NCBI GenBank assembly: GCA_002811645.1
Contig: PDIP01000082.1
Span: 11,305 to 75,304, forward strand
DNA length: 64,000 bases
From: Corallochytrium limacisporum Hawaii
Lineage: Eukaryota > Protista > Pluriformea
Reading direction: 5' to 3'
In this document: positions 44,196-64,000 of the stretch, piece after piece
How positions within the stretch are numbered: the stretch's first letter is position 1
Layout of the letters: each line of letters opens with the position of its first letter
Notes under the pieces: model-generated
Databases searched by the model: none
Told to the model about the DNA's origin: nothing
The model's input: the letters and a program-made list of their open reading frames with translations, nothing else
Made by a program: the position numbers and the translations under genes

Positions 44196-47100
44196 ACAGC
44201 CATCACACTCATGACAGGTAGACTCATTCCGCACGCCGCGCACCAGTTCTGGCTTTTCTTCTGATTCAAAGAATATATTTCATCAGCACGAAGGCAATAA
44301 AGTGAGTTTATTGAAGGCCCGTATACAAATATTGTGATTTGGCCCACGACCAGCAGGGAGAGATGTTGCAAGAGGGAGGGGAGGAAGATGGCTCTGTTGT
44401 CTCTGCTTGTTGGCTTGCTTATGTCTATCGGATGTCTCTGGGATGTGGTCTTCGTGCCACTAGCTCTACTCGCGCACTCTGCATGCTCATAGCCCATACT
44501 CTCTGGTACCCGCAGATCGACAGCGAAGTTCATCCGCTGCTTGTGCCAATAGCCACGGGGATTGAAACGCGCCTCTCGAACGCAAAAACCTCTGGATCCC
44601 TTCTTCTGAGATAAAATCCTTGAGTTAACCTCACTGTGGGGCTGTATTCATCCATATACTGGCTATCATCGGGTTTACGTCCATGGCGGCGGAGTCAATT
44701 GACGTTTGCTGCTGTTAACGGGTTTCCGGAAGCGCATGGTTCCTGGCTATTTCTACATTCTTGGTCTTTCCGTGAAATCGATTTCTGGCCCTCTCTCGAA
44801 CTTCGCCGATAGTTCATATACTTTTGCCCATTCATGCATTATCTGTGCGACCCCAGTTAACATTTTCTTGCGAAAACTCTTGGCGAGGGTTTAAAATTAG
44901 GCCCCAATCTCCCAAAACGGGGAACTCCAGAGGGCGAGGGTTGCTGTGTATGTAAGTCGTGAACTACATATTAGGGAAGTTCGCCACATATATCTATAAG
45001 AGAAATCTTGTTCCTATACCTAATAAATGTATAATGTAAATATGAAAATTCCCCTCCATCAGTCATGCACCACACCATCACCGTTAAGCCGTACGTTTCG
45101 ATTTAACTTACTATTGCCTCCCCCGCAATCTCTCTCTCTCTCACATTCTCACTCGCGCTCCAATCGAAAAGCTGTCAACGTTTTTCTGTGTCTCACCTTT
45201 GGTTTTAATTGTTGGTCCACGGTTATTATACAAACAGAGCGGAGAGCAGTGCGCTTACTTCGACCAAAGGAACCCCGTTTGCCCTTTGACTTGGTTTTCT
45301 TTGTGGGGGGGTGGGGGGGCTCTCGGGGGCAACCAGAGTGGGCATGTGCGTGTTGGCTCTTCGCATGTGGTCTGGCGACCTGCGGGATTCACCTGAACAC
45401 GGCCTCCTGCGTACTACTTGTACTAGAGTGGCTTCAGGTTCATAGTAGGCGACTTTTCCAAGACTTACTTCCAGTGGTGCGCAGCCAACTGCGAAACCGG
45501 AATCACAACGTTTTGGACCGTTCATTCTGAAGAGAGCCAGAGTGGTCCAGCAGTAGTAAGTCAGCTAAGGTCGAACTGGTGCCACTGTTTGAACTCTTGT
45601 ACCACCAGAAGATTAAGGAATTTTCCCTTCCCGCTTACAACGGAAAACCTTGAGTGATCCAACAAGAAAAAAAGGATAGTCCAATTCCTAATTTAATCTC
45701 GTCCTTCCCTCATCCAATCCCGCTCTGGGACATGGCACTCCGACTACGGAACTCGAAGGGCTGTCTGACTGAATCGACAACGGAGCTGACTCACTTATTC
45801 CGAATGAACTGCAAACTTCGAATTACTCGGTCTTTCTTCCCGGTCCATTTACCGGGGACCTCGGCGGAGGACAAAGTCCCCCCAACCCTTCCGTTTAACC
45901 CCCCCTAACCTCCTGGCCCCTCTTCGCCTTTCCTCCTGCCCATTTCGGAGTTTGCGGAGTGCAGGAAGAAAGGAAAACGAGAATCTTTGGTCTTTTTTCT
46001 AAGATGGCTTTTTTTTTTAGATACAAGGAGAAAAAAAAACCCCTCCAAGGCGAGAAAAAATCTTTCGCGGTTCATCCTTCATCGGGAGTGCGTCGTCGTG
46101 TGGTGAGCATCGCATGCACATATGCAGACAAACACCTAGAGAAGGCAAGAGGTTAAACTGCGGTGATCGAAGGCAGGCATCAGGACCGAATGATGGGGGG
46201 GGGGGACTCTTCTCCTTTGATCTCATGGGTTCTCTCGGCTTAACATGTGGTAGTTTGACTACATAATTAATTACAGTATGTGCTGGGGTTGTGGGCGAGA
46301 ACCCATGTGTCTCTCTCCTCTGCTCCCCCCCCTCCCCCTTCTCTCTCCACTCTTTTTCTTTCTGTTTGTCTCAAAGGTGTGTTAGGGACCTACCTTAGAA
46401 ACCCCCGGGAGACCCCCTCCTTTTTGCTCCCTCTGGCGCGGTGGCGGTCAGAAACACAGTGGCCTGGAACCCACCAAGGGCACTAACTGTAGCCACTCTA
46501 CTACATTTGCTGTCGGGTGCTGATGCGATCTCCATGGACCCTTGTGAGGGGGACGGGGGGTTATGAAGGGTTTCTTTCTGCAGGGCATCAGGATGGACAG
46601 TGCGCATGGTGAGTCAAGTCCCCCAAGCTTCCAACGTGCCCCGTGGACAAAGATATACAGATGCCCCCATTCAGTAATCAAAGTATGCCCCCACTGGACA
46701 GTCATCTCTACATATCTTCTTTTACCTTGCACCGGTGATGGACAATGTCTGATATTCCCTGCAGATTACCGTTTGTCTTGTCCAAGAGTTGGACTCGGGA
46801 TGGACAAGCTCAACGGAACCATTAGGTGATTTCGACATTGCTCATGGAGCGACTGCTGTCGACGGGTACCCTTTCCCGTGTTTTTTTTTTCCCTTGGTTC
46901 TTTCTGGGACTTTTTAGCTGGTCACATTCTGCATACGGTCGGGGTTTACAATAGCGTAACTCTTCCCACACTTTGGGGCCCCACCGACAACTTTGGCTAA
47001 TTCATCCAAGTGCCTTAAACTCTCTCTTCCCCCCCCCCCCCCGGCGGGGTCGCTTCTCCTTGTCCCAATCAACGTTTATATTTTTAGCTTGTGTGGCTGC

Positions 47101-47950
47101 AGCTGCTGCTGCTGCTGCGCCTGCCACACGTATTCACCTTTTTAACTCTGTGTACGCGTGGACGGCCCCCGCAGGCAACTCCCCCTCGTCTACACAGCGC
47201 ACAGTGGACACTCCGCCCCCTCTTCCACCCGCTTTTGCCCGTATAGATTCCTGCCCGATAGAGCCAATACAGGGTCCGCCCTATCGACGCTGCAAATCTT
47301 CAACCAAGAAGAAAAAAAAACACACACACACAAACCGTTGCAAAATTTCTTTTAGCAAAATACACTCACTACGGGTACGTCCAGGGTGATAGGTCGCCTA
47401 GGGAGGGCCCATGGAGTGTGACCTTGGGGCCTTGGGTTGGGTGGGGGTAAGGGGTTACGGAAGGGAAATGGTTAGGGTTAGGTAAAGGGAGAGGGGGGGG
47501 GGGGGGGGCGGGCATCTGAAGCCCAAGCGGAAAAAAAACGGGTGAGAAGAGCCAGAGGACTGCCAATTGCCTGGAGAGTCGGAGCCGCGCTCCCATATGA
47601 GACGTCTCAGACAGCACGACGTACGAAGGGCTTTGATACTCAGTCAGAGGGTTTCGGTTTGTTTGCAGAGATATGTTTTCCCTCTCTGAAGCGTACCGGA
47701 TCTGCGGGGTTGAAGCATTGGACATCTGCAATTACTTGGTAGGACCCTGTTCATTCGCGTTCTATGAGAGACGAGGTTGGTGTTTCCGCCGAGCGTACGG
47801 TAGCAGTAACTAGTTGGTGAGAGTGACAAGATTGAATTGACTTACATTACCGGATTCTTTATGTTATTGTATTCATGGATGCTTTAACTATGATGATGAT
47901 GCGGACTGCATTTGCTGGATTGAGTTTTTGTAATATTGAAGGCATGCAAC

Positions 47951-49171
47951 TTAGCTGATGATGCTAGCTCCAGCACCAGTGCGGAGCACACGGCTACGGT
48001 CCTTTTGGCGACGGTTCTGGAACCAAGTGCGTACAATCTTGGTGTCCAGGCCAGTTACGGCGCAAATGTGCATGATTGCCTCGCTGCTGGGCTTGGGGTT
48101 GCGCATGTAGCAGGCCTCAAGGTGCTGGCGAGTGGCACGGCCAATGGCGGTGCGGACGCGCTTGCCACGGCGGTTGGGGTTGTTGGCGTTGGAGTTGCTG
48201 CTCTTGGGCTGCACCTGGAAAACACCACGCTGGTAGTCATCCATGAGTTGACGCAGACGACCAATGAAGGCAATCTTGGCCTCACCATGCTTCATGCCCT
48301 GCTCAAATTGGCTGACACTGCTCTGGTCATACTTAATGGCCTCAGCAACATCAAACTGGGTCATCTTGCGCTCCATGCGCCACAGACGGAAGTATTCCTC
48401 GAAGCGCTCCTCAGGAACCTCATAAGGGTTCTTGGTCGCAATCAGGGTGGACTGGTTACCACCGTTCAGGCTGGCGCTGCCGGCAGAGGAGCGAATGTTG
48501 GACACCAAGCTATTGGTGGTGCTGTCTGCGGAGTCGGTAGCACTCAGGGTGGGATCCCGGAGACCGGCGTAGTAGTTCTGACCAAAGGGGTCAGCGGAGT
48601 AGGAGTCGCGGGAGCCTCCAAAGTGACGAGGCACGGCCATGTTCATGGGCACGCTGTGAGCCTGTTCACTGATCATCTGCCAGCGGCTACGGCCCTGAGA
48701 GTCGTAGTGAGACGTACCAGTGGTCTGGGCTTCCGAAGGAGTGGAGTATCCTGGGGCAGTCCACGGCACATTTGAGTAGTCAAAGTGTGGGCTGGCCGCG
48801 TCGTTGGCAGGAGCTTCGGACATGGCGGGAGTCTGACTGTAGTAGTTCTTTTCGTGCGGGGTCGCCGCAATAGTAGAAGGATAGGGGCTTGAGCTGGTGC
48901 CGCTGAAGCGCTGACTGTTGTTCTGCTGCTTTTGGTATTGGAGGACAGACGGCTGTTGGTTCTGCAGGTTCATGCTGCGCAGCTGCTGCTGGATGTGGTA
49001 CTGAGATTCCTGGTTGGTGGAAGTCTGCTGTTCAGTGGATGCTTCGACTTCAGTGTTAGTGCTCTCAGCAGCGGTTGTTGTGTTGCCAGTGTACCAGTTG
49101 CTGGTAGTATTGTCGGACAGCCAAGTGTTTTGCTGTTGCTGATATGTCAGAGGGGAAGTCTGTGTGGCCAT
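47951..49171 (-). CDS. POU-like homeobox transcription factor (POU-specific-like HTH + linker + homeodomain)
   Basis: Q/S/T/N-rich N-terminus; FEEYFRLWRMERKMTQFDVAEAIKYDQSSVSQFEQG (about 48412-48235); homeodomain RRGKRVRTAI...LEACYMRNPKPS...VRTWFQNRRQKDR (about 48173-47995). Confidence 0.88.
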   Translation of the reverse strand: MATQTSPLTYQQQQNTWLSDNTTSNWYTGNTTTAAESTNTEVEASTEQQTSTNQESQYHIQQQLRSMNLQNQQPSVLQYQKQQNNSQRFSGTSSSPYPSTIAATPHEKNYYSQTPAMSEAPANDAASPHFDYSNVPWTAPGYSTPSEAQTTGTSHYDSQGRSRWQMISEQAHSVPMNMAVPRHFGGSRDSYSADPFGQNYYAGLRDPTLSATDSADSTTNSLVSNIRSSAGSASLNGGNQSTLIATKNPYEVPEERFEEYFRLWRMERKMTQFDVAEAIKYDQSSVSQFEQGMKHGEAKIAFIGRLRQLMDDYQRGVFQVQPKSSNSNANNPNRRGKRVRTAIGRATRQHLEACYMRNPKPSSEAIMHICAVTGLDTKIVRTWFQNRRQKDRSRVLRTGAGASIIS

Positions 49172-49807
49172 TTTGTTATAGCTGTGTTCCTCGGTTATTG
49201 ATATGTAGCCGACGAGAATGAAACAAAATTGTACTGATCAAACCCATGAAGACGGATCGTAATACGATACACGGTTGTCCACTTATACCTTTTGCGCGTC
49301 TGGTCTCCAATCACAAACCAAGCTCAACCTGCATATTAGAGTTCGGAATCGCATGCCCTTTTCCCCTTATTCCCTTTTCGTTTGATGGCCGTCGTTCTCG
49401 GCTGGTCGGTAGCTTTGGAACAAGCAGGAGAATAACTTTACAAAAAGGGACGAGTCCGTTTCACGTACGCACACGGAGGATCCCCCCGTTTAACTCCTGG
49501 TAGAGGACAAGCCAATTTTCGTTCCAACTCCACCCACCCCCCTCCTTCTCCCTGCTTCTCCTCTTTCTTTTTCCTTCCTCCCTCGTCAACCCCACCCCGT
49601 ACCTCTAGACCTCTCATTCTCTCTCTCGCCCCTCGGCCGCTCTTTCCCTAGTTTTTCTGCCTATAGCTCGCTCGGGTCAGCGCCCCGGTTTCCCCCCCTC
49701 CCCCCGTTCCCCGCCCTCCTCCCTCTCCCGGCCGTATTTCTGGGCCGATAAGTAAGGGAACGGTCAGTGCATCCGTCGCCTTTCCCCCCCTTCCCCCCTC
49801 CCCCCCC

Positions 49808-50027
49808 NNNNNNNNNNNNNNNNNNNNNNNNNNNNNNNNNNNNNNNNNNNNNNNNNNNNNNNNNNNNNNNNNNNNNNNNNNNNNNNNNNNNNNNNNNNNN
49901 NNNNNNNNNNNNNNNNNNNNNNNNNNNNNNNNNNNNNNNNNNNNNNNNNNNNNNNNNNNNNNNNNNNNNNNNNNNNNNNNNNNNNNNNNNNNNNNNNNNN
50001 NNNNNNNNNNNNNNNNNNNNNNNNNNN
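49808..50027. other. Assembly gap
   Basis: Run of N flanked by C/T-rich tracts. Confidence 1.
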
Positions 50028-53000
50028 CCCCTTGCCCTCCCTCCCTCCTCTCTTCCCGGGGTGCTCCGTTCCATTCCTCCTTGCTCTTCTCCTTCCCCCC
50101 CTCCCTCTCCCGTCCCCCCTTTCTCCCTCGTTCTTGCTTTCCTCTTCTCGCTCTCTACTTTCCATTGTCCTCCCACCAGCACCTCAAAAATTCATCTCCT
50201 GTGGCTGTAGTCCAACGCATATACGCAAATTATAAACCATTGAAACTGAAGCATAATACCATCATAGACAGTGTTGTGATGATACAATACTGCGGATCCG
50301 AGTGTCTCTTTGCTTGCTGCTGTCTGGGATGAGCGCTGCGGACGGCACATACGTAGTATCAGTAAGAATGCAGCAGGACTCGATCCGTGATACTTGGTTG
50401 CATAACACTCTGGATTTCCCTCTTCCCCTCCCCCCCCTCCTCCCCCTTTTCTCCCTTCACCTCCTCCGCTCTTACGTGGGTTCTGCCATTTCCCTTTGGT
50501 CCCCCGGGTCTCCCCCCCCCCGGTCGCTCTCCCTAGGCATCCCATTCATTTCAAATCTCCTCCCATGACAAAGCCAAAATTGAAAATGAGAGATACAAAC
50601 ATGGCCATCCACGATGTGCAGGTGCAAATATTTTTGTCGCAGTATTCTCAATGAACTACTTTTCACCCCTGCCCATGTTCACAGTTCCTACGACCTTTTG
50701 ACGGTGCATTTTCTATGGCACCACAAGTATGCAAACCGAAATTTAAATTAGAGAGGTGGCAGTTGGAGCGATCAAAACGGCGGCCCTGCACCGACGCTGT
50801 GCAAGATTCAGTTCGGCCATTGCCGTTTCGGTTAGGTTTCGCTCCTTTTCCCCCATTTTGGGGCGCAAAACTCCTGTTGGAGAGCACCAAATTCATTAAT
50901 AGTTCCTATATACTCTATACCTCTCTCTACGAGTATTGTGGAAGGGAAAGGAGTAGGGATGGAGGGGAAAAGGGGAAGAGCGAGTGGAAGGGAAACTTTT
51001 CCCCCTTTCTCCTTTGGGCACTCTCACTTTGCGACAGAGAGCAGAGGGGAGGTTGAGCGAGCGAGAGGATAACCCCAGGAGAGAGCCAGTCAGTGCACTG
51101 AGTACTAAGTGTCGAGCAACGAGAGGAGGCGAGTAGATCTGTCAACCCGCGAGAAACATGAAAGACACAACGTGTTTCGAGATAACACAGGCGCAGGCCC
51201 GTACTGACCACCACGACCCAGCAGTGATCAGCATGGGCCTAACTGCCGTTATAGCCACAACTGATGCGCATCTGTGGACTCCGTGTTTCGGCACTTCCAC
51301 ATAGTCTCCGGCGGATGGATGTTTCATACAACAGTCAAGCAAAGTGCCACGGTATCACGGGGCCTCGGTATCAAGAAAGGAAATTAGGCGTTGAGTGGGA
51401 GGGGAAAAAGTTTATTGCTAATTTCGAAAGGAACGGGTCACCACGGTGGACTGTCAGTTCACGACAACTTCGTACTGTTTGTACAACAATCCCAAAACGA
51501 GTTTGTTGTGCCGGTGACTGTTTTGGTCACTAGTTTGAAATATCTCGCCCTATATTTTTTTCGTTTCTTTCGGTGGAACTGGATCCGTGGGGTTGGGTTG
51601 GGTGGGACTGAGCGTCAGTGGCTAGTTCGCCTTCTCTATCAGGGGGTAGAGGGGGTCGTGTGACGTTGCAAGTCGTATACAAAGAGCAACTGTGGACAGC
51701 AGGCTCACAGTGCGGTGGTGGGACGCACACGCAAATCCCGTAATAACCCACGAACGAACTTCGAGAGGAAACGGGGAGTTTCATTTGTGGCTTTGTATGA
51801 AAAGCGTTGTAGTCTTCGCGGCCTCTACAGTGTAACTGCATCAGGCAATGTGGCCTAGGATTCACAGACCGACGGGCATGGTCTTGTTATTGCACCAGTG
51901 CTCAACCTTTAAGCAAGCAAAACTCTGACACTCGCCAATGTTCGTTTCGCAGAGTTGAGCCGAGGAAACACCGGCGGAGAGGCACCGTAAGTGCTACTCT
52001 ACTGTTCGGATGGCAGCACAATTCTGCTCTTAACATGGTGAGAGGTCAGTCAGGCATGTGTCAGCTGAGGGCAATGCGCCTGTTTCTCCATGCTCCGAAA
52101 CGACGGGTACCATGGGATACGTCGAAGGTGGATATATATGTGGGAGGAAAGCAAAGGCAGATTTCGCAGCCTGCGCTTTGCCTGCGAGGAAGACGTTGCT
52201 CCTGCTGGGAACACCGTTAGGTGCGTCGACAGTGAGCCAGGACTGCAGACCTAGATAACTCCTCCTTATAGTGGCAACCGCAGCCTCCATACTTCAATGG
52301 AACACAGACATAGTCAGATATAGATCACTTTGATACGCACAGAGACATTCTTGGCTGCGCTGACCCATTATGTCTCAAGTGGAATCAATCAATGCTACTA
52401 GAGCACCAAGTAACAGAGAGGTCGAAGATTGCAGTTTGTATGGATGCTCCTTGGATGACGAAGCATGTGGATGGCGTGAATGTGATTGCGTAGCAGACTA
52501 TGCATGCAAGATAGGGTTGGGAAAATGCATTATGCGGTGATGAGAAGCAGTGTGCCACTTAAGCACCATGTATCATTTATATTTTATGTGGCTGTCGCAC
52601 ACCAACGATCATACCTCTCACACCCGCACCACTCCAATCAGTGAGGTCTGAGGTGTTTCTATATTTTACATATTTGGATCCATGTGACACCTGCTTCTTC
52701 ATTGTGTATATATGCATACACTATGAATGATCGCCAAAGCGCGCCGTTTTCTCATATAATGAAATGACGAAAGCAATTCTGTGGGCGGTGAATGTGATAC
52801 AACAACCCTATGCAGTAAGTCGCCTGGCACGTACTGACTAGTTTGCCAATGAATGACATGGGGTGAATGTTTTCTTGGGTACAAGAAGCAAAGTGAAGTG
52901 AAAATACTAACAAACAAGAGGATGAGAATGAGAATACAAGAACTTGAAGCAGGACAAACCTGCACGCGCGATGGAAGTCTGTGTCAATATAATTAATCAA

Positions 53001-53213
53001 CGCAATAGATTACACACCAGGGTGAAGTGAAATACCAGTTGACATAGGCAAAGCGCGTGTTTTACGCTATTCGCGTACCCTTCGGGCTTCACCATGCTCT
53101 CCCTTTCTTCTTGAAACGCCAATGGGTCTCGAAACGTTACGGCCAGACTGACGTACTTTCCCCAGTGCATTTCCGGTCCATGTCCGCCGTCCGGCCGCTC
53201 TCCGTTTGTTGGC

Positions 53214-53216
<3 letters not shown>

Positions 53217-53266
<50 letters not shown>

Positions 53267-53392
53267 CCGTCCCCATACCGTGGTGGGCGCACAACTCAAG
53301 AAAAAAATCCCGAACCCNNNNNNNNNNNNNNNNNNNNNNNNNNNNNNNNNNNNNNNNNNNNNNNNNNNNNNNNNNNNNNNNNNNNNNNNNNN

Positions 53393-53441
<49 letters not shown>

Positions 53442-53492
53442 CCGTCCCCCTACCGTGGTGGGCGCACAACTCAAGAAAAAAATCCCGAACCC
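53217..53492. repeat. (CA)n microsatellite plus about 50-bp flank duplicated on both sides of the gap 53318-53392
   Basis: (CA)n-tccgtcccc..gtggtgggcgcacaactcaagaaaaaaatcccgaaccc at 53217-53317 and 53393-53492, with one mismatch. Confidence 0.85.
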
Positions 53493-56400
53493 TAAAGACA
53501 ATTAGCCCCGGTTCGCAAAGTCCCCACTCCCACACGGTCAATCAGGAAGCGCACCCTCCAACTGCCACGCAGGAGCAGTGTTAGGAGTGGTAACACCGGT
53601 CCAGAGGGGAAGTTGGTGTTGGTCTGTGATTCTGTTTTTCTTCTACTGGCGGTACCCGAGCGATGGAAAAAATTGTCCCCATAAATTTGGTCTCGGGGAC
53701 GCGCCCCTCCCCGCATTTCTCCAGGGAGGAAGAATGTCTCTGTGCGTAACAAGAATGTATGGAACGCCCACAATGAATAGGGTCAAATTTTTGTGAGCGC
53801 CGATTTCTGGGTGTGTCGAACTGTGTATCCGGGTGTGGGGAAGGCGGACATTAGCATATCGATGTATGAGCTACTTTAACGAAGATGAAAGACAAGCGGG
53901 GCATCGTATGATTTCTTCACGTTTTTATCCGTGGACAATCATCAAATATTTCTACTACTTGTCTCATCATCTACTTGTTTTGTTCTAGGTACTTCCGTAC
54001 TGATTTGCTTACTTTCTACTTGTTACCGTTCTACGTCTTTTGTAAGAAACCTGTGCCTCAAAAGCACTCACGCCAAGTAGCATGCACCATCGACAACGCA
54101 GTGTCTTTTCTAATTGACCATATGGTCAAGTTAACACACTGCTAATAGTATTCCGATGTTTGAAATCACAACTCTCATTTTCTTCCCACTCTGTCTTCAA
54201 CCTCGTTCCTTTGGCTCAATGGACGAGGTAAGGTGTCCGGGCTGCGTTTGATGGCTTGTTGGGGCACACCCGCTTGACATAGAGTACGATATTCGCACTC
54301 CAAGTAACGGTTATCTCTGACGTCGTTCTGCTTGGGCATTCTAAGGCGCACAGCAGTTGCAAAATATTGGTTCATGCATAGGGCGTTGATCTCTGCGGTG
54401 ACGGTGCGATTGGAAATTGTTGGGCCCAACACTATGGTAGTACTGTTATAGTGCACGCCAGACAAGGAAGCCGCGTGACAGGGTCCTTTTGACTAACTTC
54501 GTTCCTTCCCCAATCGTTATCAGCAATTGGTCAAGATGGTATATATATATTTTTTTCTTGTTTTCTGCTTGAGTCATCATCCATCCCTGATATTTTCTAC
54601 TTCTGCGGCTGAAGACGTCGGGATCCCGCGCACGCAGATGGAACGGACATCCATGTTGCTTCCGGCAGTACCCTGGTAATGCAGTGTGGATGGATGCTTG
54701 TCCGATAACCAGGAAAACACACAGGGAACAGCTCTGTTCCGTGATTTTCCGGAAAAACAAGAGGCAAGGTAAGCATAACACACGAACAAAATACACACGG
54801 GAAATCCGCCAAGATTCAGGTTCATTGTATCCTCTTTGTCACCGCATGTGCGCGTTTCCGTAACCATCTGTGCACTACTACTGTGCCTCGTCTCCTTCGT
54901 CCTGGTGGATGGTGTCGGTGTCCGGGACGAGCACATGGTTCTTTCGCGATCAACAGAACCATCGAGAATGACATCAAACTCTCAGTTAGTCGAAACACAA
55001 CACCAACACCAAAGACAACTACGTACACCATTTCGCATCCACTCAGTATCAGTGTTGTACGTTGTGGACTAGGACAGTGCTGAGAAATAGTAGTAAATTC
55101 AGGAAAGGATGATGAATAGAATATCAAAAATGTAGTTGGGAACGAACAAGTAATGGACTTCAAGTTTTTGTCTATTACTGCTTGGAAGAAATGAACGCCA
55201 GATATAATGCAACTTTAACTACCAAGACATACCGCTCTGAGCTTGATCAGTCGACCGGCAAAAGATTACTAGGCTACTAATCCAAAGCATAATCTTCCAT
55301 GGTATCCTCAGCAACATAGCGGGAGTATTTGGAAATTCAGTACATTTTGTGTGGTCATTTTTAACAGGATATGTAAAAAGTTTGAAGATTACTCACGCAG
55401 TTATGACACATTATTTCCTTTCCGCCCACACCATCATCCTGCTTGCACTCAGACAGAAAGCCAACCCATATGCCACTTTGCCACCAGGGCACCGAACGAA
55501 CGATCCTAGTAGATTATATGAGGTGTCGGGCTTGCGGGGCAAAAAAGACAAGCCGAGCGGTAACATGGAGAACTATTTTGTCCTACGGGGAAATCGCTTT
55601 GAGACGCATTCTCCCTGTTTCTTTTCAGTCCGTGTTTCCCAAGGGAATCTAAAGTTTCCTTTGGCTTCTGGCTTGTTTTGTTCTTCCATTTCTTCCCATC
55701 TTCCTCTCGGCAACCAATCTGGTAAAATATGATACGTTAATTGCCTGCTCGCTTGACCCGAACACAAAGAAATTATGCAGGTGGTTACCAACCTGAGGGC
55801 TCCAACTCTTAATCTAGCATCGTTTGGATAATAATGTAACTACCACTCTTTTGACTGAAGTCCAATGAAGTCCACACCACATTTCCCGTGTCCCAAATGA
55901 AGAATGTTTGTCAGATTCGATGCCGCACCAGCTCACCGAATACTCCGATTCAAAATATGTTGCGCAAACTTCCGAAAAGGTCAGTATGCCAACTATTGCA
56001 GTCAATTATCTCAAATATAGTCTTGTGCATCGCGGTGTCACATACACCGATAGATACAATCCCCGTGATGACGACAAACACAGTCCCCGCGTCCCCCTAT
56101 CTAGAAACAAGTTTCTCCATTTGATAAAATTAATATTCAGTAATGGGCGCGGAAAAGATAGGGGTGAGCATATTCTCCCTTGGAAGGAAAACTTTGAAGC
56201 AAAATGATGGATCTTGGACGGGTCCCATTTTTTTTTGTTTTCAGGACCCCTTCTTCTGCATGCCTGCCATTGCAGCCACCGTCCGTCCATCTTAAGCGAT
56301 ACGCCCAGAGAGGAGTACCTAGCAAATTTGTGTGTGCCTACGGAGTACTGCACACGAAAGTCCGGAACACGCATTGCGGCACTCATCAATATTTATCAAA

Positions 56401-56726
56401 TAATAGGCCTTAATGTGTTGGAGGGCGGGAGACAACATGAAGATAGATTTGATTCCATGTGAAACACTAAGTTTGTTCTAAGTAACATAGTGGCGGGAGT
56501 GGCAGTTGCGAGCAAATCATGGGCATCCCCCAACCACCCAGTCAATTTAATGCAATCTATGAAGATACGAGATGAAGCACCCACCACTCCGCTTCACAGC
56601 ACTAGTGCGATACGACCGTTCACACCAGGGAGACCGTAAAAACTTGAGAGGATGTGAAGAAGGTGGCATGAACAGAAAGTCGTTGGTGCTCCGGCCCTCG
56701 GTGGGATCTGGCGAAAGAAAACAATG

Positions 56727-56730
<4 letters not shown>

Positions 56731-56780
<50 letters not shown>
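56731..56780. repeat. (GA)n microsatellite
   Basis: 25 perfect GA units. Confidence 0.95.
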
Positions 56781-56784
<4 letters not shown>

Positions 56785-59700
56785 GGAAGACGGTACTCCG
56801 TCAAAGGAACCCTTGATTCCTTCTGCAACACTGCTGCCGTCTCTTTGTTATTCTCAGTAACAACGTGGAGAAGGAAGGATGGAACCCTGAAGAATTTAAC
56901 GATGACTGGATTCTGCATAGAAAGTCTCTGTTGCACAAAACCTTCAACGCCAGGTGTTTTGCTTTAACCTGCCAATTTTTTTCGGCTTTTGCCATGAGTT
57001 ACCGGCGTTGTTGGCCGCTCCCTTTTTCGAATCAAAGAAGACTAGAAATTGGCCGCTCACCGAAAATGGATGAACGCGGATCCAAATATAAAAATATCAC
57101 TGCAGAAAAGAGATAGAGGAAACGTGGTAATACGATGGCTATGAATGCGCTCGATGTAGTGAAGCCTACTGCGCAATTTAGGAGGAGCGCGGCGAGGACA
57201 CGGAGCGGCACACCAACGAACTCTGCGAAGGGGTGGTACCGATGGTGTGTTTCTGGGAATCATCACTTGGATACAATACCGAGTTCCAACCAAGGTACTC
57301 CAGACCCGCGTAACAACCTGCTCACAATGGCTACTGAATTCAAGGGCGGCCGGGCACAAGCCATTCCAAAATGCACTGGAACTCACATGGCAGGGTCGAT
57401 GGAATGGGTCACTCCTCTTCAAACCGCAACTTTTCAGAGCAGGATGGGAAGAATTCAAACAAGAAAGGGCGTCTGCGTATCTGTGGAAAAATGCGGGAGA
57501 TCTCTTCCCCACCTGCTGCTCCTTCCTCTATTGTCGACCAGTCTATTCCATTTTCGATGGGCGGCGGCTGTGGCATGGACCAGTATTTAGAAACCATCAC
57601 ACGAGTCCGCTGGGCAGACATTTTCCTGTGTAAAGCATCGGATTTTGATGGGGTTGTCTAATACTCTCCTGTGTAAAGCATTCGAATATGTTGGTTGTCT
57701 AACTCTCCGGAATCGATGTCAAACGGGTCGCCTCTCCGTCCGTTCGATTTTGCAACTCCATATATTCTGTATGGGCGCCTTACGGTCATGTCACTCTTCA
57801 ATTTTCGATGCCCGGTCTTAGCTCTCCGGGTGGAACATTCCGTCACCACAAACTCTCGTCCCGGTTCATCACATACAGCCGTGCTGTGTCTCAGTGTTCA
57901 TGTGCCAATAGGCATCATCTGACCTACTGCCTGCTGGTTAATTTTCAACATCGGATGGACCTGTGAACCTCTTCATCCGTCCCGTTTGATGCACTTTTGG
58001 GTCGGAGGGTTGCTTTCTTTGGCAGGTCAGCAGGCCATAATAGCCATCGATTCGGAGGATGGGATGATGTGTTAGCTGGATGGCAACCCTGTTCAAGGAG
58101 GAGGGCCCAGCAGCGCAGTTCCAGAGACTCTTTCTGGCGAGTTTCTTTCATCCACAGCTGGCTGACTGGCTGACTGGCTGGGCGGTGATGCGGCCGGATA
58201 CTCTGCTGATTGGGTACACCGTCATCGCGGAGTGTTCAAGCCGTTGGTCGGGAATGAGTAATTGACCGGAGCTGATGGGGTAGGGTTGGTCGAATAGTAA
58301 TTGTTTCTGTTCCGACAACAGATGATATCCGACGAGACCGAAATGAATTGGACAAATCCTCCTCTCTCAACCACACACTGCAGTCCCGTTCTCCTTTCAC
58401 TCTCCTCCTATGCTACATGCCTCCGTCTGTCTATCACTCTCCGCTCCATCTGTGCCTGTGGTCCATTCAATACTTGTTGTCTCCGTTGCCGGAGTACAAC
58501 CTAAGCACCTCATGCACCGCGGGTGTATTGTCCGCTGCAAGTTCGAAGAAACAGAGAGGATGGCGCACCGGAGAGTGGAGTGGGAGACGATGGCAGTGCC
58601 AGATTGTCAAGTTACTACGACCTTCCACAAACTCTTTGCTCACCACCCGGATTGCATCCGACCAATGAGGATCCCGTCTATCACAGGGTTGCACATGAAT
58701 GTGCACAAACACCAGCCAACGACAACGAGGAAGTAACCACGGAAAACGACTGGGATCATGACATGCATCCTGGAGTGCAAGACTCCCTTGTGTGTAAGTA
58801 TTATCTCCACTACTCAATACAAACTTGTTTCCACCTTTATGGTTTCCAAGCATTCGAGTTCGGAATGTGAGCGGGCAAGGGAGACTGGTGGCAGGGGAGC
58901 AGGGAGTGCTCGGCATTCTCTTTCTCCAAAGTCGGATGTCACCGAGGATTGAAGGTGGGACTTGAATACTAAATGAATGTAATATTTTTCCACTTTGCTG
59001 ACCAGGAGTATGCTTCCCCCCTCCTCCTCCCCCAAAAGGAGGTTTGGTGCTCCTCCTCTCGGGTCCTTTTGGTCCCGAGTGGCACACCAACGATGACGTT
59101 CGTCAGCCGGAGCGGGGGCACACAGATCAAGGAACTCAGCAAAGCCGCAATGCACTGGTCGTTGGTCCCACACAAGCGGCAATGTCTCACACACCGGGCG
59201 CACGAAGAGTCCGAAGTCTCACACAGAGCAGCACCATGCCCCGGTGAACGGGTGAGCCACAACGTTTTGGTTGCTTGTCGCGTATAAATATGAGCGGTCA
59301 GTCACTTTCGCGAGGTGGTACAAGCGGAGCGCGGCCCTGAGTGAAGTCACGAGGTGCCCCAGTTTTTTGGAATTTTTCTTGAGATGCAGAGATATAGGGA
59401 AAAAGATTCGGCGGGCAAGTAATCTTATGGAATCACTGTACCTCAACAAAATGAAGAGAGAAAAATAGGTTTTCACTTTACATCAAATATTTATGGGACC
59501 ACACTGCATGTTGTCCCTGCTCGTTGCTCACATTCGCGAATCCTTTATCACCAACATGTGTGTGTGCTCGTAATTATCCGGCCCCACCATCACCATTCGT
59601 CATGGGATGTGTGTGAACATCCGCAAGGGAAACACGCGTACTAAAGTGGTGTGAATCCCCGCGGTGTTTGAATATGCTCGGCAGGGGTTGGGCAGAGTGT

Positions 59701-61922
59701 CTCGCAGAAACCTTGACCTAATCATGAGAGCATGCGACGCAGTACCGTTGTTTTACAAACACTCAGCCAGCTTTCTCGTCTTTGTCTCCCGCTTCCATCG
59801 ATCTCTCCTTGGATAAGATTCTGTCCAGGCCCCTGCCTTCTCTTTGCTTCACGGAAAATGGATAGGGGAGGAAATGACTCTTAAAAAGTGAAAAATTGGT
59901 TGATCAACAATCCAAACAGGTAGTCGCCTGCTGTTGCAATCATCGGCAAGCGTATCTCCCTCTCTGATAGTGTAAGGGAAAGGCCTAGAAGCGAGAACCC
60001 GCATCCCCCCCCGGGGGGAGGGGGCCGGGAGGGAATTACCAGAGTGTTACAGTTCGGTTGTACTCAGAAGTGAGCGCGACATGGTGGCGAGCCATAACGC
60101 ACAGAGCAGCACATACAAAGGCAGAAATTTTCTGGTTCCGAAAAAGACGTGTCCATCTGTAAAACCAAAAGCCTTATAGGGCTAAAAGACTACCCACAAA
60201 TTCTGTCTATACCTTGTATTTTTGATGCTGGATCAGTTTCCCGGTTGTGTATTATCTCAGTCGCAACACCACATCCGTCGGTGTCAGGGTTATAGCTTTG
60301 TCTCTGTTTGGTTCTATTGGGGTTCGTGATTTCTGTGTAATACATGGTCACAATACACGTAAACAATGGAAAATACAGTGACACTGGCTGGAAACCAACG
60401 TTGCGTTCCTGAGGCCCTGTACCAACGTGTTCCGCCGCAGCATCTATACCGGTGAGCTGTGCTGTGCTGTGTTGCGCGGTGGCTCGGACTGCGCACATAC
60501 TGCTTTTGGGATCCCACATGAAGTAAAATTTAGGAGCACTTAGCAGGCGAAACGGAGAGAGAGTGAGAGACCGCGTACAGGACATATCTGTTTCGTCAGA
60601 AAGAAACACCTATTCACAAGGGACCTCCATAAATGGGAACGAAAACCATGGTTTTCCTTCCAGCTCCGTTCAACTTGCCATAGTTTTTGTTTACACAACT
60701 CGGCATTTTTTGCCAGGCCCACCATGGCGCTCGTGCAAAAACTTCACTTCGTGGAATCAAAAACAGTAGCCAAAATTGACTAACAGTCAGTCAGTACTGA
60801 AATTTTCTTCTAAGGGAACGGATGGGGAAGTCCACTTCCACCCACGGTCACATATCTCCTCAGGGGAACCCCTCACCACTACAGAACATCCTTCTGCCAT
60901 CATCTTCACCATCATCAACATCAATCAATCTACAGACATCTATTGCCATGTCAAAACACCGCATTTCCAACAGCCGCATTCACAGTCGCAGCTGGTCTTG
61001 CACGAGCGCCGGACTTGGGTGGCATACAAGGCCAAACATTCACTTCATCTGCGGGCATCAATGATGCAGTTCTAGATTTGATTAGGAGGTGTTAGGTGAC
61101 TCGCTGGGGGAACTCGCTGGGGAGACGAGTCTTGGCCAGGAGGATGGGGCTCGCAAGGCAGTGTTTGGTGATGGCGAAGTGATCTTCCTTACGCTCAGTG
61201 TTGCTTCTGTGTGACTATCTATCACCCTTGCCCTCCGTGTTCGTACCATATTTCTTAGTGTCAAGCTCCCTACATTTGTCCTGAACCCTGCTATCTCAGT
61301 TGTCCAGTGCCCTGCTCCCTGCATGCTCCCCCGGCCTATACCCAATACCAATTTTCCCCTTTCCCTCTTGTTCTGGTCTGTTTGTCTTATTGTATTAATT
61401 CAACATCCAGCTCCCCCCAACACGTATGGTCGCACGCGCAGACTCTTCATTCTTTTTTCTTCCAATACTTCATCATTCTCAGTGTTTCCTCCCCCGCCCT
61501 TCTCTTAGAGTTTACGTTAGACGCAAGGCCAGGCCGTGAGTCATTTGGGGCCACCTTATTGGACGGACAGATTGGGTGCAGCTTGTTGTATGTCCTGCTG
61601 CTTCTTCTTTAGTATCTCAACAAACCTGGATCTCTACGGCGACTGCAGGGTATCGAGAAACACGGTAGCCAAATTGACTGAGAACGGACGACTTGAGCAT
61701 GGACAAGAAGTTTGGTGCCAGTTCTGGTGTTGGACCACAGTCATGCCTCCATATCTCTCTTCCTCACCATAAGTTTGTTCAAAAAGTTCCGCAAAAAAAT
61801 CAAGAGGACAAGAAATTGAAGGGACCAAGTAGATTACACTCGGGACAGAATTCATACAAGAGCGAGAGATAACGCGTGAGAGGGAGAGAAAGGGACAGGC
61901 AGAGACACACAGACTCTCCTCC

Positions 61923-61929
61923 CTCTCTG

Positions 61930-61972
<43 letters not shown>

Positions 61973-61992
61973 GTGTCTCGCTCTCGCTCTCT
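61923..61992. repeat. Imperfect (CT)n microsatellite
   Basis: CT-rich dinucleotide tract with GT interruptions. Confidence 0.9.
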
Positions 61993-64000
61993 TAGAAAGG
62001 GAGAGCCAGCAAGCGAGCACAGCTTCTGGGCAGTCATGAAAGATCCGAAAAGAGGTGTAAACCTGACTAAGATAAATCCATTATGTATGTATGCGGGTGT
62101 GGAGTTCCCGTTGTCGACCGATCTGAGAGACGAGCGACGCGGATCTGTTGCAACAGGGTAATCGTGTCTCCTTCCACCAACCCACACACACAAACATCCA
62201 CAAAGTGTCGTAAACTCTGGTGATGATCATTTACTGGTTCTATCGAGGTTAGACGGCACGCTTCGGAAAAGATGGATATTCATATACGATACAAACACGT
62301 ACAAGCGCAAGCTCAACAGTTGTGTTCGGCATATTAGTCATTTGAATTTTAGTAGCCATAAATATGTATGTACCTACGCGAAGTTTGGAAGATACATTTC
62401 GAAAGGGAATATGGCAAAAAGTAAAGAATGGCGGGCCCAGGTGAATGAAAATTTCCAAAGGCCGTCTACAGCCCCCCCCCTGCCTTCCCTGCACGGCGGA
62501 GAACGTAGAAAAGCGCAAGGAAAGAGTGACCACCCTCCACACAGTTTCAACAATTTCATATGATTTGATGAACGAACAAATGAATTCTTGGGTGGGTCCC
62601 GATCTAGCCGCCTCCTTGGATCTGAGCGCGCATGTGTGTGTCTATGAATGAGACTGTGTGGGCCAGTTCTAGAACGACTTCAGTTCGATGCCACACCTCG
62701 CCAATGTAGTTACACAAACCGGTCCGCGACCGAGGAGGGTGACGAAAACTGCAAAGTTTCGCCCAAGAAATGACAATTTTACGGCAAACAACCTCGAACG
62801 GGTAATCACGAAGACCGGTTTGAGTCGCGACACATCGATACTGTTGGGTACGGTGAATTACACTTCATAATTGCAAGGTTATAATTATTATTCTCAGGAG
62901 GCTTTCAAAAAAAATCACTTGCCAATTATAAACATTTGCAACCGTATCTTACCATTCTGATAGTAATGCTGTTGTATCAGGCAGTCGCACTTGCCAGGAA
63001 TGTACCTTAATATTTATTTCCGCTTTGTCCTCAAACGTGTAGAATGTGTGCCTATGTCTTACCGCACATACCAGTGGCGTAGCCCACGCGTTTCCGTTCT
63101 ACTGAGAGCAGCTGCATTAATGGATCGCTTTTTTGGACATTGGCTCTGGAGTCTGTTATGAAGATGTTCTGGAGTAAATTTTCTCTTGTAATCTTCTATT
63201 TTTCATAATGTATATTGGTGATGGATGTGTTTCTGAGCACTTTCTTGTTGGGATGGGATCGGAGACCGTTACCTATTTTGTAGTCATAGAAAAAGTATCT
63301 GTGTGGACACGGTGGTTAAGTTCATCATGCCAGAACTTGCCTCATACCATCGAGCAGGAGCGTCAGTCAACCAGCCATGAGGAGCATCCTGATGGGATGA
63401 AAGCAATTGGAACGGGGAAGTTCAGATGCGCTGCACAGTGAAATGTCTACACACCTTTGTGGGCGAGAGCCATGCGCTACTTGTAGCCTTCCTTTAGTGT
63501 ACGACTCATTAAGATGTGTGAAGAATGTTGCAGCTGTGCGTTCGAATGCGTGTAGCGGTTCACACGGCGGTCAGCAAGTGCCCTGTTGCCCCATATCTCT
63601 CCCCTGCCAGTTTGACTCTTATAATATCCACAATGAATGGGGAAAAAGTTTATCAGCATACGTCTATGAATGATTGCCACTTGTGCCTCACATTGCCACC
63701 GGGCGTTCGCTTACAACTTCCGCAAATTTCGCGCACCAACCGATGTTATCCGAGTCCACTGACTCTCCTCCTTTGCACATAGCCTGCCAGTAGAATTTGC
63801 CAGCAAATCCCCCAGCGTTTTGTTTTCTTTTTACGTAGTGTCTCCATGCTCTTTCCGTTTCATGTCACTCACCGCCCCATTCCCTGCTATCCGATTCTAA
63901 CTGTGAACGGCAAAGAGTATTCTTTTACTCGCGAGAGAAAGATCGCGGAGGCCGAGTAAGTCTGACCAGCCCCCCACCCTCTCGTTTATTTTCTTTTTCG

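What the first reader, a model, noticed from the sequence alone, without database searches (positions are those of the whole stretch)
47990..48415. Proto-POU transcription factor: repressor-length POU-specific-like HTH joined to a POU-type Q50 homeodomain
Seen: a bipartite DNA-binding region, FEEYFRLWRMERKMTQFDVAEAIKYDQSSVSQFEQG...LRQLMDDY, then a 21-aa linker, then RRGKRVRTAI...LEACYMRNPKPS...VRTWFQNRRQKDR. Established: animal POU-specific domains read F.K.FK.RRI.LG.TQADVG.ALG.LYG..FSQTTICRFE and POU homeodomains read RKRTSI...LE..F...PKPS...VRVWFCNRRQK. The homeodomain here shares the POU-typical RTxI, PKPS and NRRQK but has T47/Q50 in place of V47/C50. The first domain keeps the helix-1 Arg, both helix-start Gln and the FE Glu, but lacks the roughly 6-residue insertion in the HTH turn that separates POU-specific domains from lambda/434 repressor (XRE) HTHs, and has Q for the recognition-helix Arg. 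Inference: this may be a structural intermediate between XRE-type HTH and POU-S in a unicellular relative of animals, with non-octamer specificity. Non-animal POU-like factors have been reported in unicellular holozoans, so novelty depends on the phylogeny.
Basis: partly seen in the sequence, partly recalled or inferred. Interest (0 to 1): 0.88.

Follow-up and report, generated by a model that had tools for sequence, protein, structure and literature searches.

The report
POU-like two-part gene switch, protist
A single-celled relative of animals expresses a gene regulator with a bacterial-repressor-type DNA-binding domain tethered to a homeodomain that groups next to animal POU factors, so it may be an early relative of that family, though a separate origin is not ruled out.

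Summary
Window 47951-49171 (minus strand) is an intact, intronless 406-aa ORF, covered end to end by transcript-sized contigs.

- **Domains.** It encodes a disordered S/T/Q/N-rich N-terminal half, a four-helix HTH (residues 254-314), a 21-aa linker and a 60-aa Q50 homeodomain (336-395).
- **Homeodomain.** It is sister to all sampled POU homeodomains (support 97/89 and 99/94). AU tests cannot reject an Islet/LIM placement (p 0.065-0.21).
- **HTH.** It does not match Pfam Pou and lacks the 6-residue POU-specific insertion. By sequence it is nearer bacterial XRE proteins (24-27 bits) than POU-specific domains (11-13 bits).
- **HTH fold.** The model, made without POU sequences, has POU-specific domains as its best solved-structure matches (Z 9.3-9.9). 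Profile comparison places it between XRE and POU-specific.
- **HTH family.** Its only close relatives are two Syssomonas proteins that have no homeodomain.

Verdict: a real POU-like bipartite transcription factor in a Corallochytrium-like holozoan. It is most likely a sister lineage of the POU class. Independent fusion remains a serious rival. It is a new variant of a known kind. The scan had separately noted a SAM-CUT-homeodomain gene on other DNA of this genome.

The parts
47951..49171 (-). Complete intronless ORF of 406 aa (ATG at 49171-49169; stop codon included at 47951-47953)
   Evidence: the ORF listing. The same protein is returned as P0001, held in EukProt.
47871..49231 (-). Inferred unspliced transcript of about 1.36 kb (about 60 nt 5' UTR, about 80 nt 3' UTR)
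   Evidence: Contigs of runs X1 and X2 cover 47871-49231 only. There is no cover over 46200-47870 or 49232-49700, and no joints. The runs are only guessed to be RNA, and contigs do not give the strand.
48425..49171 (-). N-terminal half (residues 1-249): S/T/Q/N/A-rich low-complexity region, probably a disordered regulatory or activation region
   Evidence: Composition S 15.7%, T 12%, Q 10.8%, N 8%; no Pfam domain. The function is inferred.
48230..48412 (-). Four-helix XRE-type / POU-specific-like HTH domain (residues 254-314; helices 254-267, 272-279, 283-290, 296-314)
   Evidence: AlphaFold models; HTH_31/HTH_3 sub-threshold; family alignment A1 with Syssomonas; structural matches.
48302..48325 (-). 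Predicted recognition helix QSSVSQFE (residues 283-290). Gln at the Oct-1 Q44 position is kept; Ser replaces T45; Gln replaces R49.
   Evidence: Alignment to Oct-1; helix limits from the model.
48167..48229 (-). 21-aa flexible linker (residues 315-335)
   Evidence: Block mean pLDDT about 53 in the linker and no secondary structure; coordinates.
47987..48166 (-). 60-aa homeodomain (residues 336-395) with R5, T6, I8, PKPS at 24-27, T47, Q50, N51 and RQK at 53-55
   Evidence: Pfam PF00046 at 54-58 bits; residue numbering; phylogeny.
47954..47986 (-). Short C-terminal tail (residues 396-406)
   Evidence: Translation.

Best explanation
This is a real, transcribed, intronless gene of a Corallochytrium-like unicellular holozoan. 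It encodes a sequence-specific transcription factor with a POU-like bipartite DNA-binding region.

A disordered S/T/Q/N-rich N-terminal half is followed by a four-helix HTH of the XRE / lambda-434-repressor type. A 21-aa flexible linker joins this to a classical 60-aa Q50 homeodomain.

Inferred mechanism: as in POU factors, the two tethered helix-turn-helix modules each place a recognition helix in the major groove and read adjacent half-sites.
- The homeodomain (R3 and R5 in the N-terminal arm, Q50, N51, R53) should read a TAAT-type core, as the Q50 choanoflagellate POU does.
- The HTH keeps the Gln pair that POU-specific and 434 repressor domains use, but has Gln where POU-specific has the guanine-contacting Arg49. 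It should therefore read something other than ATGC, and the factor should not prefer the octamer.

Evolutionary reading: the homeodomain is sister to all sampled POU homeodomains. The gene is therefore best read as a sister or stem lineage of the POU class. Its HTH is still repressor-length: it has no POU-specific insertion.
For: - **Gene is real and expressed.** Intact ORF. Transcript-sized contigs in two runs cover only 47871-49231.
- **Domains.** Homeodomain at 54-58 bits; HTH_31/HTH_3 at E 9e-5 and 4e-4. Two AlphaFold models have pLDDT 89.6 and 87.7 and show four helices, a linker and three helices.
- **Resemblance to POU across both halves.** The best PDB sequence hits are all POU proteins. 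Oct-1 and Pit-1 align collinearly over query residues 8-145 of the 159-aa segment. The whole-region model matches POU structures over about 145 columns, ahead of HNF-1, DUX4 and Onecut.
- **Homeodomain ancestry.** The best single-domain hit among 1.84 billion representatives is P0143, a Pfam-verified Pou + Homeodomain protein (52.3 bits). ML trees give query + 7 POU 97/89 (38 rows) and 99/94 (62 rows), with the POU-only clade at 88/80 and 96/86. K25, D41 and R46 are POU-diagnostic residues that the query shares.
- **HTH.** hhalign scores to POU-specific 58.4 over all four helices, and to an XRE set 69.0 over helices 1-3 only; POU-specific to XRE scores 38.1. The top three of 48,161 PDB chains by VIA-align are POU-specific domains (Z 9.9, 9.7, 9.3; bacterial XRE proteins at or below 7.3). 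Foldseek TM normalised to the query is 0.75-0.79, with rmsd 1.1-1.2 A over 65-67 columns for Pit-1 and Brn-5, against 0.50-0.64 for XRE proteins.
- **Precedent.** Q50 and TAAT binding in choanoflagellate POU (Gao et al. 2024, PMC11564870).
Against: - Pfam Pou gives no hit on the protein or anywhere in the genome, even at E <= 10.
- The HTH lacks the 6-residue insertion typical of POU-specific domains.
- The HTH family profile scores bacterial XRE proteins at 24-27 bits but POU-specific domains at only 11-13 bits, and the divergent environmental ones below 0.
- A POU-specific profile scores this HTH (9 bits) and its Syssomonas relatives (14-16 bits) no higher than its best non-POU hits in the PDB (12-16 bits).
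- Prokaryotic HTH_3 models in the ESM Atlas fit the fold at TM 0.64-0.75, so the structural preference for POU-specific holds only among solved structures.
- The only close relatives of the HTH (Syssomonas P0052 and P0119) carry no homeodomain.
- AU tests do not reject query + Islet or query + LIM-type (p 0.15, 0.065, 0.19, 0.21).
- The trees lack choanoflagellate POU sequences and the ANTP, PRD, SIX, CUT and HNF classes.
- No comparable gene was found elsewhere.
- DNA binding itself is untested.
Confidence: 0.55

Rival explanations
1. Independent (convergent) fusion. Pluriformea (Corallochytrium + Syssomonas) own a lineage-specific XRE-type HTH family that moves between proteins. In Corallochytrium one copy became joined to a homeodomain from the LIM/POU-related part of the homeobox tree. 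The protein works like a POU factor, but its bipartite architecture is not inherited from a common ancestor with POU. This would parallel the separate assembly of repressor-fold + homeodomain in the CUT and HNF1 classes.
For: - The HTH family occurs once and twice per protein in Syssomonas, with no homeodomain.
- The HTH scores higher against bacterial XRE proteins than against POU-specific domains and has the XRE-length turn and the XRE-like 'FE.G' motif.
- Islet-type LIM homeodomains score as high as the best POU homeodomain (52.1 against 52.3 bits).
- AU tests do not reject LIM or Islet placement.
- The same genome has a second, unrelated repressor-fold + homeodomain gene (SAM-CUT-like-HD), with no detectable similarity between the two HTHs. 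Such fusions therefore recur.
Against: - ML trees place the homeodomain with POU at 97/89 and 99/94, and its five nearest rows by path length are all POU.
- Domain order and linker length match POU.
- The HTH aligns to POU-specific across all four helices but to XRE over three only.
- The best solved-structure matches are POU-specific domains.
Confidence: 0.35
2. A secondarily simplified true POU gene. The ancestor had a canonical POU-specific domain with the insertion and Arg49. The Corallochytrium lineage then lost the insertion and drifted back towards the generic XRE consensus.
For: POU-specific domains are clearly plastic in divergent lineages. P0143 and P0162 lost Q44, T45 and R49 and have A50. 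P0137 has T47 and 'FESG' after the recognition helix.
Against: The insertion-free form is conserved at 41-48% identity between Corallochytrium and three Syssomonas domain copies. Those proteins are not POU proteins. A precise 6-residue loss followed by convergence on XRE-like motifs needs more steps than retention. The homeodomain branches outside all sampled POU sequences, not within them.
Confidence: 0.05
3. The HTH is not a DNA-reading module. It is a protein-interaction or dimerisation module, as some XRE-fold domains are (MBF1/EDF1 on the ribosome; antitoxin partners). Only the homeodomain binds DNA.
For: MBF1/EDF1 appears among the structural matches (Z 7.4). The best sequence matches are the antitoxins HipB and HigA2. 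Helix 4 is one long amphipathic helix.
Against: The residues that POU-specific and 434 repressor domains use on DNA are kept and are invariant or nearly so in the family: the helix-1 Arg, the Gln at the start of helix 2, and the Gln at the start of helix 3. HipB itself is a DNA-binding repressor. The tether length suits two-module binding.
Confidence: 0.05

Closest known systems
Animal POU-class transcription factors (Oct-1, Pit-1, Brn, Oct4)
   Same: The order is N-terminal four-helix repressor-fold HTH, flexible linker, then homeodomain. Alignment is collinear over both halves. The homeodomain motifs RTxI, LE, PKPS, LD and NRRQK are shared. The homeodomain is sister to the POU homeodomains in ML trees. 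POU-specific domains are the best solved-structure matches of the HTH.
   Different: There is no Pfam Pou match. There is no 6-residue extension of helix 2 and the turn. T45 is Ser and R49 is Gln in the recognition helix. The homeodomain has T47/Q50 instead of V47/C50. Octamer binding is therefore not expected. The organism is outside animals and outside Choanozoa.
Choanoflagellate POU factors of Mylnosiga fluctuans and Salpingoeca helianthica (Lopez-Escardo 2019, PMC6792448; Gao 2024, PMC11564870)
   Same: They are non-animal, have a Q50 homeodomain and branch at the base of POU. S. helianthica POU binds TAAT-like sites rather than the octamer. This is the nearest functional precedent.
   Different: Those proteins pass Pfam Pou and keep Q44, T45 and R49. 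The present HTH does not pass, and it has no insertion. Their sequences could not be fetched here, so they are not in my trees.
Bacterial and phage XRE / Cro-C1 HTH proteins (HipB, HigA2, 434 repressor, C-proteins)
   Same: They give the best sequence matches of the HTH profile (26.8 bits for HipB; 24-27 bits for small XRE proteins). The helix-turn-helix spacing is the same, and they share the '[ST]Q..[IV]S..E.G' type of motif.
   Different: The domain has four helices with one long helix 4 rather than five. It is eukaryotic and fused to a homeodomain. No close bacterial relative was found (best 33% identity and 27 bits).
Islet-type LIM-homeodomain proteins
   Same: Homeodomain similarity equals that of the best POU hit (52 bits). 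They share Y20, the TGL motif before helix 3, and Q50. The AU test cannot exclude a sister relation.
   Different: There are no LIM domains. The genome's own LIM-HD gene is a separate locus (L003). The ML tree places the query with POU.
CUT (Onecut, SATB) and HNF1 classes
   Same: These have the same general design: a repressor-fold domain upstream of a homeodomain. They are neighbours of the query by language-model features. CUT domains are structural matches at Z 7.7-8.4.
   Different: There is no Pfam CUT or HNF-1_N hit. No Onecut or HNF1 homeodomain appears among the 60 PDB sequence hits listed, the weakest of which scores about 20 bits. The homeodomain here is a typical 60-aa domain without their atypical residues or insertions.

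Membership tests
POU class (POU-specific domain + POU homeodomain) | POU-specific domain recognised by Pfam PF00157 at or above 27 bits | tested here: not met
   No Pou hit on the protein or the isolated segment at E <= 10. No Pou match in the whole genome at E <= 10. A small POU-specific HMM built here gives 9.1 bits.
POU class (POU-specific domain + POU homeodomain) | Extended helix 2 and turn of the HTH (about 6 extra residues compared with lambda/434 repressors) | tested here: not met
   A 6-residue gap in the query against Oct-1 and other POU proteins appears in three alignments. The model shows a 3-residue turn.
POU class (POU-specific domain + POU homeodomain) | Base-contacting residues Q44, T45 and R49 of the POU-specific recognition helix | tested here: not met
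   Q44 is kept, T45 is Ser and R49 is Gln. R20, Q27 and E51 equivalents are kept.
POU class (POU-specific domain + POU homeodomain) | Four-helix fold that superposes on solved POU-specific domains | tested here: met
   Model made from pluriformean sequences only, pLDDT 87.7. POU-specific domains rank 1-3 of 48,161 chains (Z 9.3-9.9). TM normalised to the query is 0.75-0.79. This is not exclusive: prokaryotic HTH_3 models reach TM 0.64-0.75.
POU class (POU-specific domain + POU homeodomain) | Homeodomain groups with POU homeodomains in phylogeny | tested here: inconclusive
   ML trees: query + 7 POU at 97/89 and 99/94, with the query sister to POU. AU tests do not reject Islet or LIM placement (p 0.065-0.21). 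Sampling lacks choanoflagellate POU sequences and several animal classes.
POU class (POU-specific domain + POU homeodomain) | POU homeodomain signature residues (RTxI, PKP[ST], V47, C50, NRRQK) | tested here: inconclusive
   RTAI, PKPS and NRRQK are present; T47 and Q50 replace V47 and C50. C50 is not universal in non-animal or divergent POU proteins: Q50 in choanoflagellates and A50 in P0143.
POU class (POU-specific domain + POU homeodomain) | Domain order HTH - flexible linker - homeodomain | tested here: met
   21-aa low-confidence linker between the two folded modules. It sits inside the range of linker lengths in the POU rows of alignment A3.
POU class (POU-specific domain + POU homeodomain) | Binding to the ATGCAAAT octamer | not testable with these tools
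   Needs EMSA, SELEX or PBM. Sequence predicts no octamer preference (R49 to Gln, C50 to Gln). Choanoflagellate POU already lacks it.
XRE / Cro-C1 HTH superfamily (Pfam HTH_3, HTH_31) | Match to HTH_3 or HTH_31 over the curated cutoff | tested here: inconclusive
   The query scores 20.8 and 23.2 bits against cutoffs of 23 and 27. Its Syssomonas family member P0052 passes (36.3 and 39.6 bits). The family profile hits HipB at E 3.7e-5 in the PDB.
XRE / Cro-C1 HTH superfamily (Pfam HTH_3, HTH_31) | Five-helix bundle of the classical lambda/434-type domain | tested here: not met
   The model has four helices, the fourth being 19-20 residues long. hhalign to XRE stops after helix 3.
LIM-homeodomain class | Two LIM zinc-finger domains N-terminal to the homeodomain | tested here: not met
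   No LIM hit on the 406-aa protein. The genome's LIM-HD gene is elsewhere (L003).
CUT and HNF1 classes | CUT (PF02376) or HNF-1_N (PF04814) domain, and their atypical homeodomains | tested here: not met
   No such Pfam hit at E <= 10. The homeodomain is a standard 60-aa WFQN type.

The most novel reading that the evidence does not exclude
The gene is a surviving pre-POU form. The tethered HTH-homeodomain unit already existed near the root of Holozoa, before the split of Pluriformea from the line leading to animals. Its HTH was then still an ordinary repressor-length XRE-type domain. The POU-specific hallmarks (helix 2 / turn insertion, Arg49, later Cys50 and octamer reading) were added stepwise on the line to Choanozoa and animals. 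This would move the origin of the POU architecture well below the Choanozoa node given by Lopez-Escardo 2019 and Gao 2024. It would also give a living intermediate that links POU-specific domains to XRE-type HTH domains.
Probability: 0.4. Interest if true: 0.8.

Novelty: new variant of a known kind. Interest (0 to 1): 0.62.

Why it matters
POU factors were long treated as an animal invention. [quoted passage not shown] How the POU-specific domain arose from a repressor-like fold is not addressed in the papers read here (PMC4245813, PMC6792448, PMC11564870); I believe it is still open.

This gene sits in a much deeper holozoan branch. It combines a homeodomain placed next to POU with an HTH that lies, by profile comparison, between XRE and POU-specific domains.

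If the kinship holds, the two-module design predates Choanozoa, and the order of later changes (insertion, Arg49, Cys50, octamer reading, Sox partnership) becomes testable by biochemistry and ancestral reconstruction. If the design is convergent, it is a clean third or fourth case of the same solution: a repressor-fold domain tethered to a homeodomain. The same genome also carries a CUT-like example.

Stable transfection of Corallochytrium has been reported (Kozyczkowska et al. 2021, listed among the references of PMC13366479). In vivo tests are therefore feasible.

Tried and rejected
- **Word-indexed protein searches.** The bipartite region found only itself. The HTH family alignment found only two small XRE proteins, at 26-27 bits and 32-33% identity. 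No close bacterial donor was seen, so a recent horizontal transfer is not supported, but the tool's sensitivity is low.
- **Metagenome DNA scan with the HTH alignment.** 338 pattern matches, none a relative.
- **Metagenome scan with the homeodomain alignment.** 80 loci with NRRQ-type homeodomains. None has an A1-type or POU-specific-type domain upstream, and all are less similar to the query (at most 32.5 bits) than POU or Islet. They served only as extra rows in the tree.
- **L052 and L055.** These carry a fragment very like the query's helix 3, but lie in an intron-rich, low-GC eukaryote. Only one short exon was recognisable. I dropped them and joined no exons.
- **Own-genome search.** It found no second copy of the HTH and no canonical Pou domain.
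- **Identity of the P0137 organism.** Its neighbouring RMC1 gene is only 28% identical to this genome's, so it is not a close relative. The organism remains unknown.
- **Language-model neighbours** (HNF-1_N, CUT, Pou, Onecut) all scored below 0.9 and were used only as leads.
- **Gao et al.** No supplementary files are held. I could not see which species their Fig. 6 marks as 'POU-like (homeobox without POUs)', nor fetch the choanoflagellate POU sequences.
- **The two HTHs in this genome.** BLASTP between this HTH and the CUT-like segment of the SAM-CUT-HD gene found no alignment.
- **Artefact or pseudogene** was considered and rejected.
Full report
**1. What is in the sequence**

The finding's coordinates (47990-48415) lie inside a 406-aa ORF on the minus strand, 47951-49171, which starts with ATG.

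Pfam gives a Homeodomain at residues 337-392 (54-58 bits against a cutoff of 22.9). It gives sub-threshold HTH_31 and HTH_3 matches at 260-293 (23.2 and 20.8 bits on the isolated segment). Pou, CUT, HNF-1_N and LIM do not hit, even at E <= 10.

The first 249 residues are S/T/Q/N-rich and have no domain.

Contigs of two public runs from 2015 cover 47871-49231 and nothing in the flanks laid (46200-47870 and 49232-49700), with no joints. That is the footprint of an unspliced mRNA of about 1.36 kb. The runs are only guessed to be RNA, and contigs give no strand.

**2. The organism**

The assembly has 24,109,830 bases in 286 contigs. This matches the 24.1 Mb reported for Corallochytrium limacisporum (PMC5560861). 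Long single-exon ORFs and holozoan-type genes surround the locus. The protein is held in EukProt. The only close relatives of its HTH come from Syssomonas multiformis, which from my own knowledge is the sister of Corallochytrium within Pluriformea. The species name is therefore an inference.

**3. The bipartite region as a whole**

phmmer of the last 159 residues against all PDB sequences returns POU proteins as the best hits (Oct4, E 4.8e-12). Oct-1, Pit-1, POU2F3 and Brn-type proteins align collinearly over both halves, with one 6-residue gap in the query inside the HTH.

An AlphaFold model of residues 245-400 has pLDDT 89.6. It shows four helices, a low-confidence stretch and three helices. 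Its best Foldseek matches are POU domains over about 145 columns, followed by HNF-1A, DUX4 and Onecut. That alignment contained POU rows, so I repeated the test on the HTH alone (section 5).

**4. The homeodomain**

The exhaustive search of 1.84 billion representatives is dominated by multi-homeodomain proteins, so I re-ranked the hits one domain at a time.
- Best is P0143 at 52.3 bits. It comes from a metagenome contig and passes Pfam Pou (41 bits) as well as Homeodomain; it has A50.
- Islet-type LIM homeodomains follow at 52.1 bits.
- Animal POU homeodomains score 35-44 bits.

The genome has only six homeodomain matches. One of them is a separate LIM-HD gene.

ML trees (IQ-TREE, LG+C20+F+G4) give these results.
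- With 38 rows, the query groups with all seven POU homeodomains at 97/89, and the POU-only clade has 88/80.
- With 24 environmental NRRQ-type homeodomains added (62 rows), the figures are 99/94 and 96/86.

The query is thus sister to the sampled POU homeodomains. It shares the POU-diagnostic residues K25, D41 and R46.

There are two limits. AU tests do not reject query + Islet (p 0.15 and 0.19) or query + LIM-type (p 0.065 and 0.21). The sampling also consists of the nearest hits only. It lacks choanoflagellate POU sequences and the ANTP, PRD, SIX, CUT and HNF classes, although those classes score lower against the query in the PDB list.

**5. The HTH**

It belongs to a small family, alignment A1. 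The other members are three domain copies in two Syssomonas proteins, at 26-44% identity in the alignment (41-48% in the search). Invariant residues include F, R, W, R, T, Q, V, Y, F, E and G. A Syssomonas-only profile scores the query at 71.8 bits. Those Syssomonas proteins have no homeodomain.

By sequence, the family is of XRE type.
- Its profile hits HipB and HigA2 in the PDB at 24-27 bits, and POU-specific domains at 14-18 bits.
- In a local test, small XRE proteins score 24-27 bits, canonical POU-specific domains 11-13 bits, and the divergent environmental ones below 0.
- In the other direction, a POU-specific profile scores these HTHs at 9-16 bits. That is no better than its best non-POU hits in the PDB, at 12-16 bits.
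- As a control, a typical bacterial XRE repeat shows no POU hit among its 60 listed PDB matches.

Profile-profile scores place the family between the two others.
- A1 against XRE: 69.0, over helices 1-3 only (42 columns).
- A1 against POU-specific: 58.4, over all four helices (61 columns).
- POU-specific against XRE: 38.1.

The XRE control set is narrow (one protein's repeats plus two small proteins), so these numbers are illustrative.

By structure, the result favours POU-specific only among solved structures.
- A model built from the four pluriformean sequences alone has pLDDT 87.7 and four helices, the last 19 residues long.
- VIA-align against 48,161 PDB representatives ranks POU-specific domains first to third (Z 9.9, 9.7, 9.3). 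MuB-N follows (9.2), then the SATB1 and Onecut CUT domains (8.4 and 7.7), MBF1/EDF1 (7.4), and bacterial XRE proteins at 7.3 or lower.
- Foldseek gives TM normalised to the query of 0.75-0.79 for POU-specific domains, with rmsd 1.1-1.2 A over 65-67 columns for Pit-1 and Brn-5. Bacterial XRE proteins give 0.50-0.64.
- In the ESM Atlas, however, prokaryotic HTH_3 models reach TM 0.64-0.75 over 57-67 residues.

**6. How it probably works (inferred)**

Two HTH modules joined by a 21-aa tether would bind adjacent half-sites, as in the Oct-1 and Pit-1 complexes.

The homeodomain has R3 and R5 in its arm, plus Q50, N51 and R53. This is the usual TAAT-reading set. The Q50 POU of S. helianthica binds TAAT-like motifs and not the octamer (PMC11564870).

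The HTH keeps the equivalents of Oct-1 R20, Q27, Q44 and E51, but has Ser for T45 and Gln for R49. From my own knowledge of the 434 repressor complex, Gln at these two helix-3 positions matches Gln28 and Gln33 of that repressor. I therefore expect a half-site other than ATGC. The N-terminal half is probably a regulatory or activation region.

**7. Comparison with what is known**

Lopez-Escardo et al. 2019 found Pou + Homeobox in Mylnosiga and dated the Pou domain to Choanozoa (PMC6792448). Gao et al. 2024 added S. helianthica. They searched Corallochytrium by BLASTP with POU5F1 and reported a reliable hit only in Mylnosiga. Their Fig. [quoted passage not shown]

I found no paper describing an XRE-type HTH upstream of a POU-like homeodomain in Corallochytrium.

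Membership in the POU class as defined fails on three tested features: the Pfam Pou match, the insertion, and the contact residues. I therefore do not file the gene as a POU gene. It has the same two-module design as one, so I expect it to bind DNA in the same way. Its homeodomain is the closest outgroup to POU in my sampling.

**8. Weighing the readings**

Three lines of evidence point to kinship with POU, though the first two both rest on the homeodomain:
- the homeodomain tree;
- the nearest single homeodomain belongs to a Pou-positive protein;
- the shared order, linker and four-helix shape.

Against kinship:
- the HTH has XRE-like sequence;
- the same HTH occurs free of any homeodomain in Syssomonas;
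- the AU tests are non-significant;
- many losses would be needed in the intervening lineages, although POU is already patchy, being present in 2 of 22 choanoflagellates;

I put the sister-of-POU reading at about 0.55 including the mechanism, independent fusion at about 0.35, and the remaining readings at about 0.05 each.

**9. Verdict**

This is a new variant of a known kind. Its interest is moderate to high for people who work on animal origins, because the decisive tests (full phylogeny, wider sampling, SELEX) are straightforward.

Noticed in passing
L008 = G000:C264:3090-6278, ORF L008:364-2103 (+), outside the window: A 580-aa ORF with a SAM domain (27 bits), a weak CUT-like HTH (17.2 bits, below cutoff) and an atypical homeodomain. 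The homeodomain has an insertion between helices 2 and 3 and YYSN in place of WFxN. This is a second repressor-fold + homeodomain gene in the same genome.
   Followed up: partly
window 44196-47950 and 49172-64000: The gene sits in a gene-poor stretch of about 20 kb within an otherwise compact genome. No ATG-started ORF of 200 aa or more lies on either side; there is only a 207-aa TTG ORF at 58467-59090. An N-run lies near 49.8-50.0 kb.
   Followed up: no
window 32384-36805 (-): A 1473-aa receptor-type guanylate cyclase with an N-terminal PBP_like_2 (phosphate-binding-protein-like) domain, a kinase-like domain and a cyclase domain.
   Followed up: no
P0052 and P0119 (Syssomonas multiformis, EukProt): These proteins carry two copies and one copy of the same HTH family and no homeodomain. 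The first copy in P0052 has a slightly longer turn (YTYC). Whether the transcripts are complete is unknown.
   Followed up: partly
P0143, P0162, P0163 (JGI metagenomes and MERC); L093: An environmental lineage of Pou + Homeodomain proteins with A50 (VRVWFANRRQK). Their POU-specific domain has lost Q44, T45 and R49. The organism is unknown. They are the closest homeodomains to the query.
   Followed up: partly
P0137; L091 (ENA metagenome scaffold, 10.4 kb): A divergent, intronless 631-aa POU protein with T47/C50 and 'FESG' after the recognition helix. It lies beside a single-ORF RMC1 gene, so the host looks like an intron-poor eukaryote. Its RMC1 is only 28% identical to this genome's.
   Followed up: partly
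window 48134 and 49029: Run X2 differs from the window at two places inside the ORF (G>A and T>G on the + strand). By my count the first is a third-codon position in the homeodomain and the second is a second-codon position near residue 48. These are probably strain differences.
   Followed up: no
L052 and L055 (metagenome contigs Ga0049108 and Ga0049107): A short exon encodes LDRETVRTWFQNRRQK, which is very like the query's helix 3. It lies in an intron-rich eukaryote of about 44% GC. The rest of the gene was not recognisable.
   Followed up: partly
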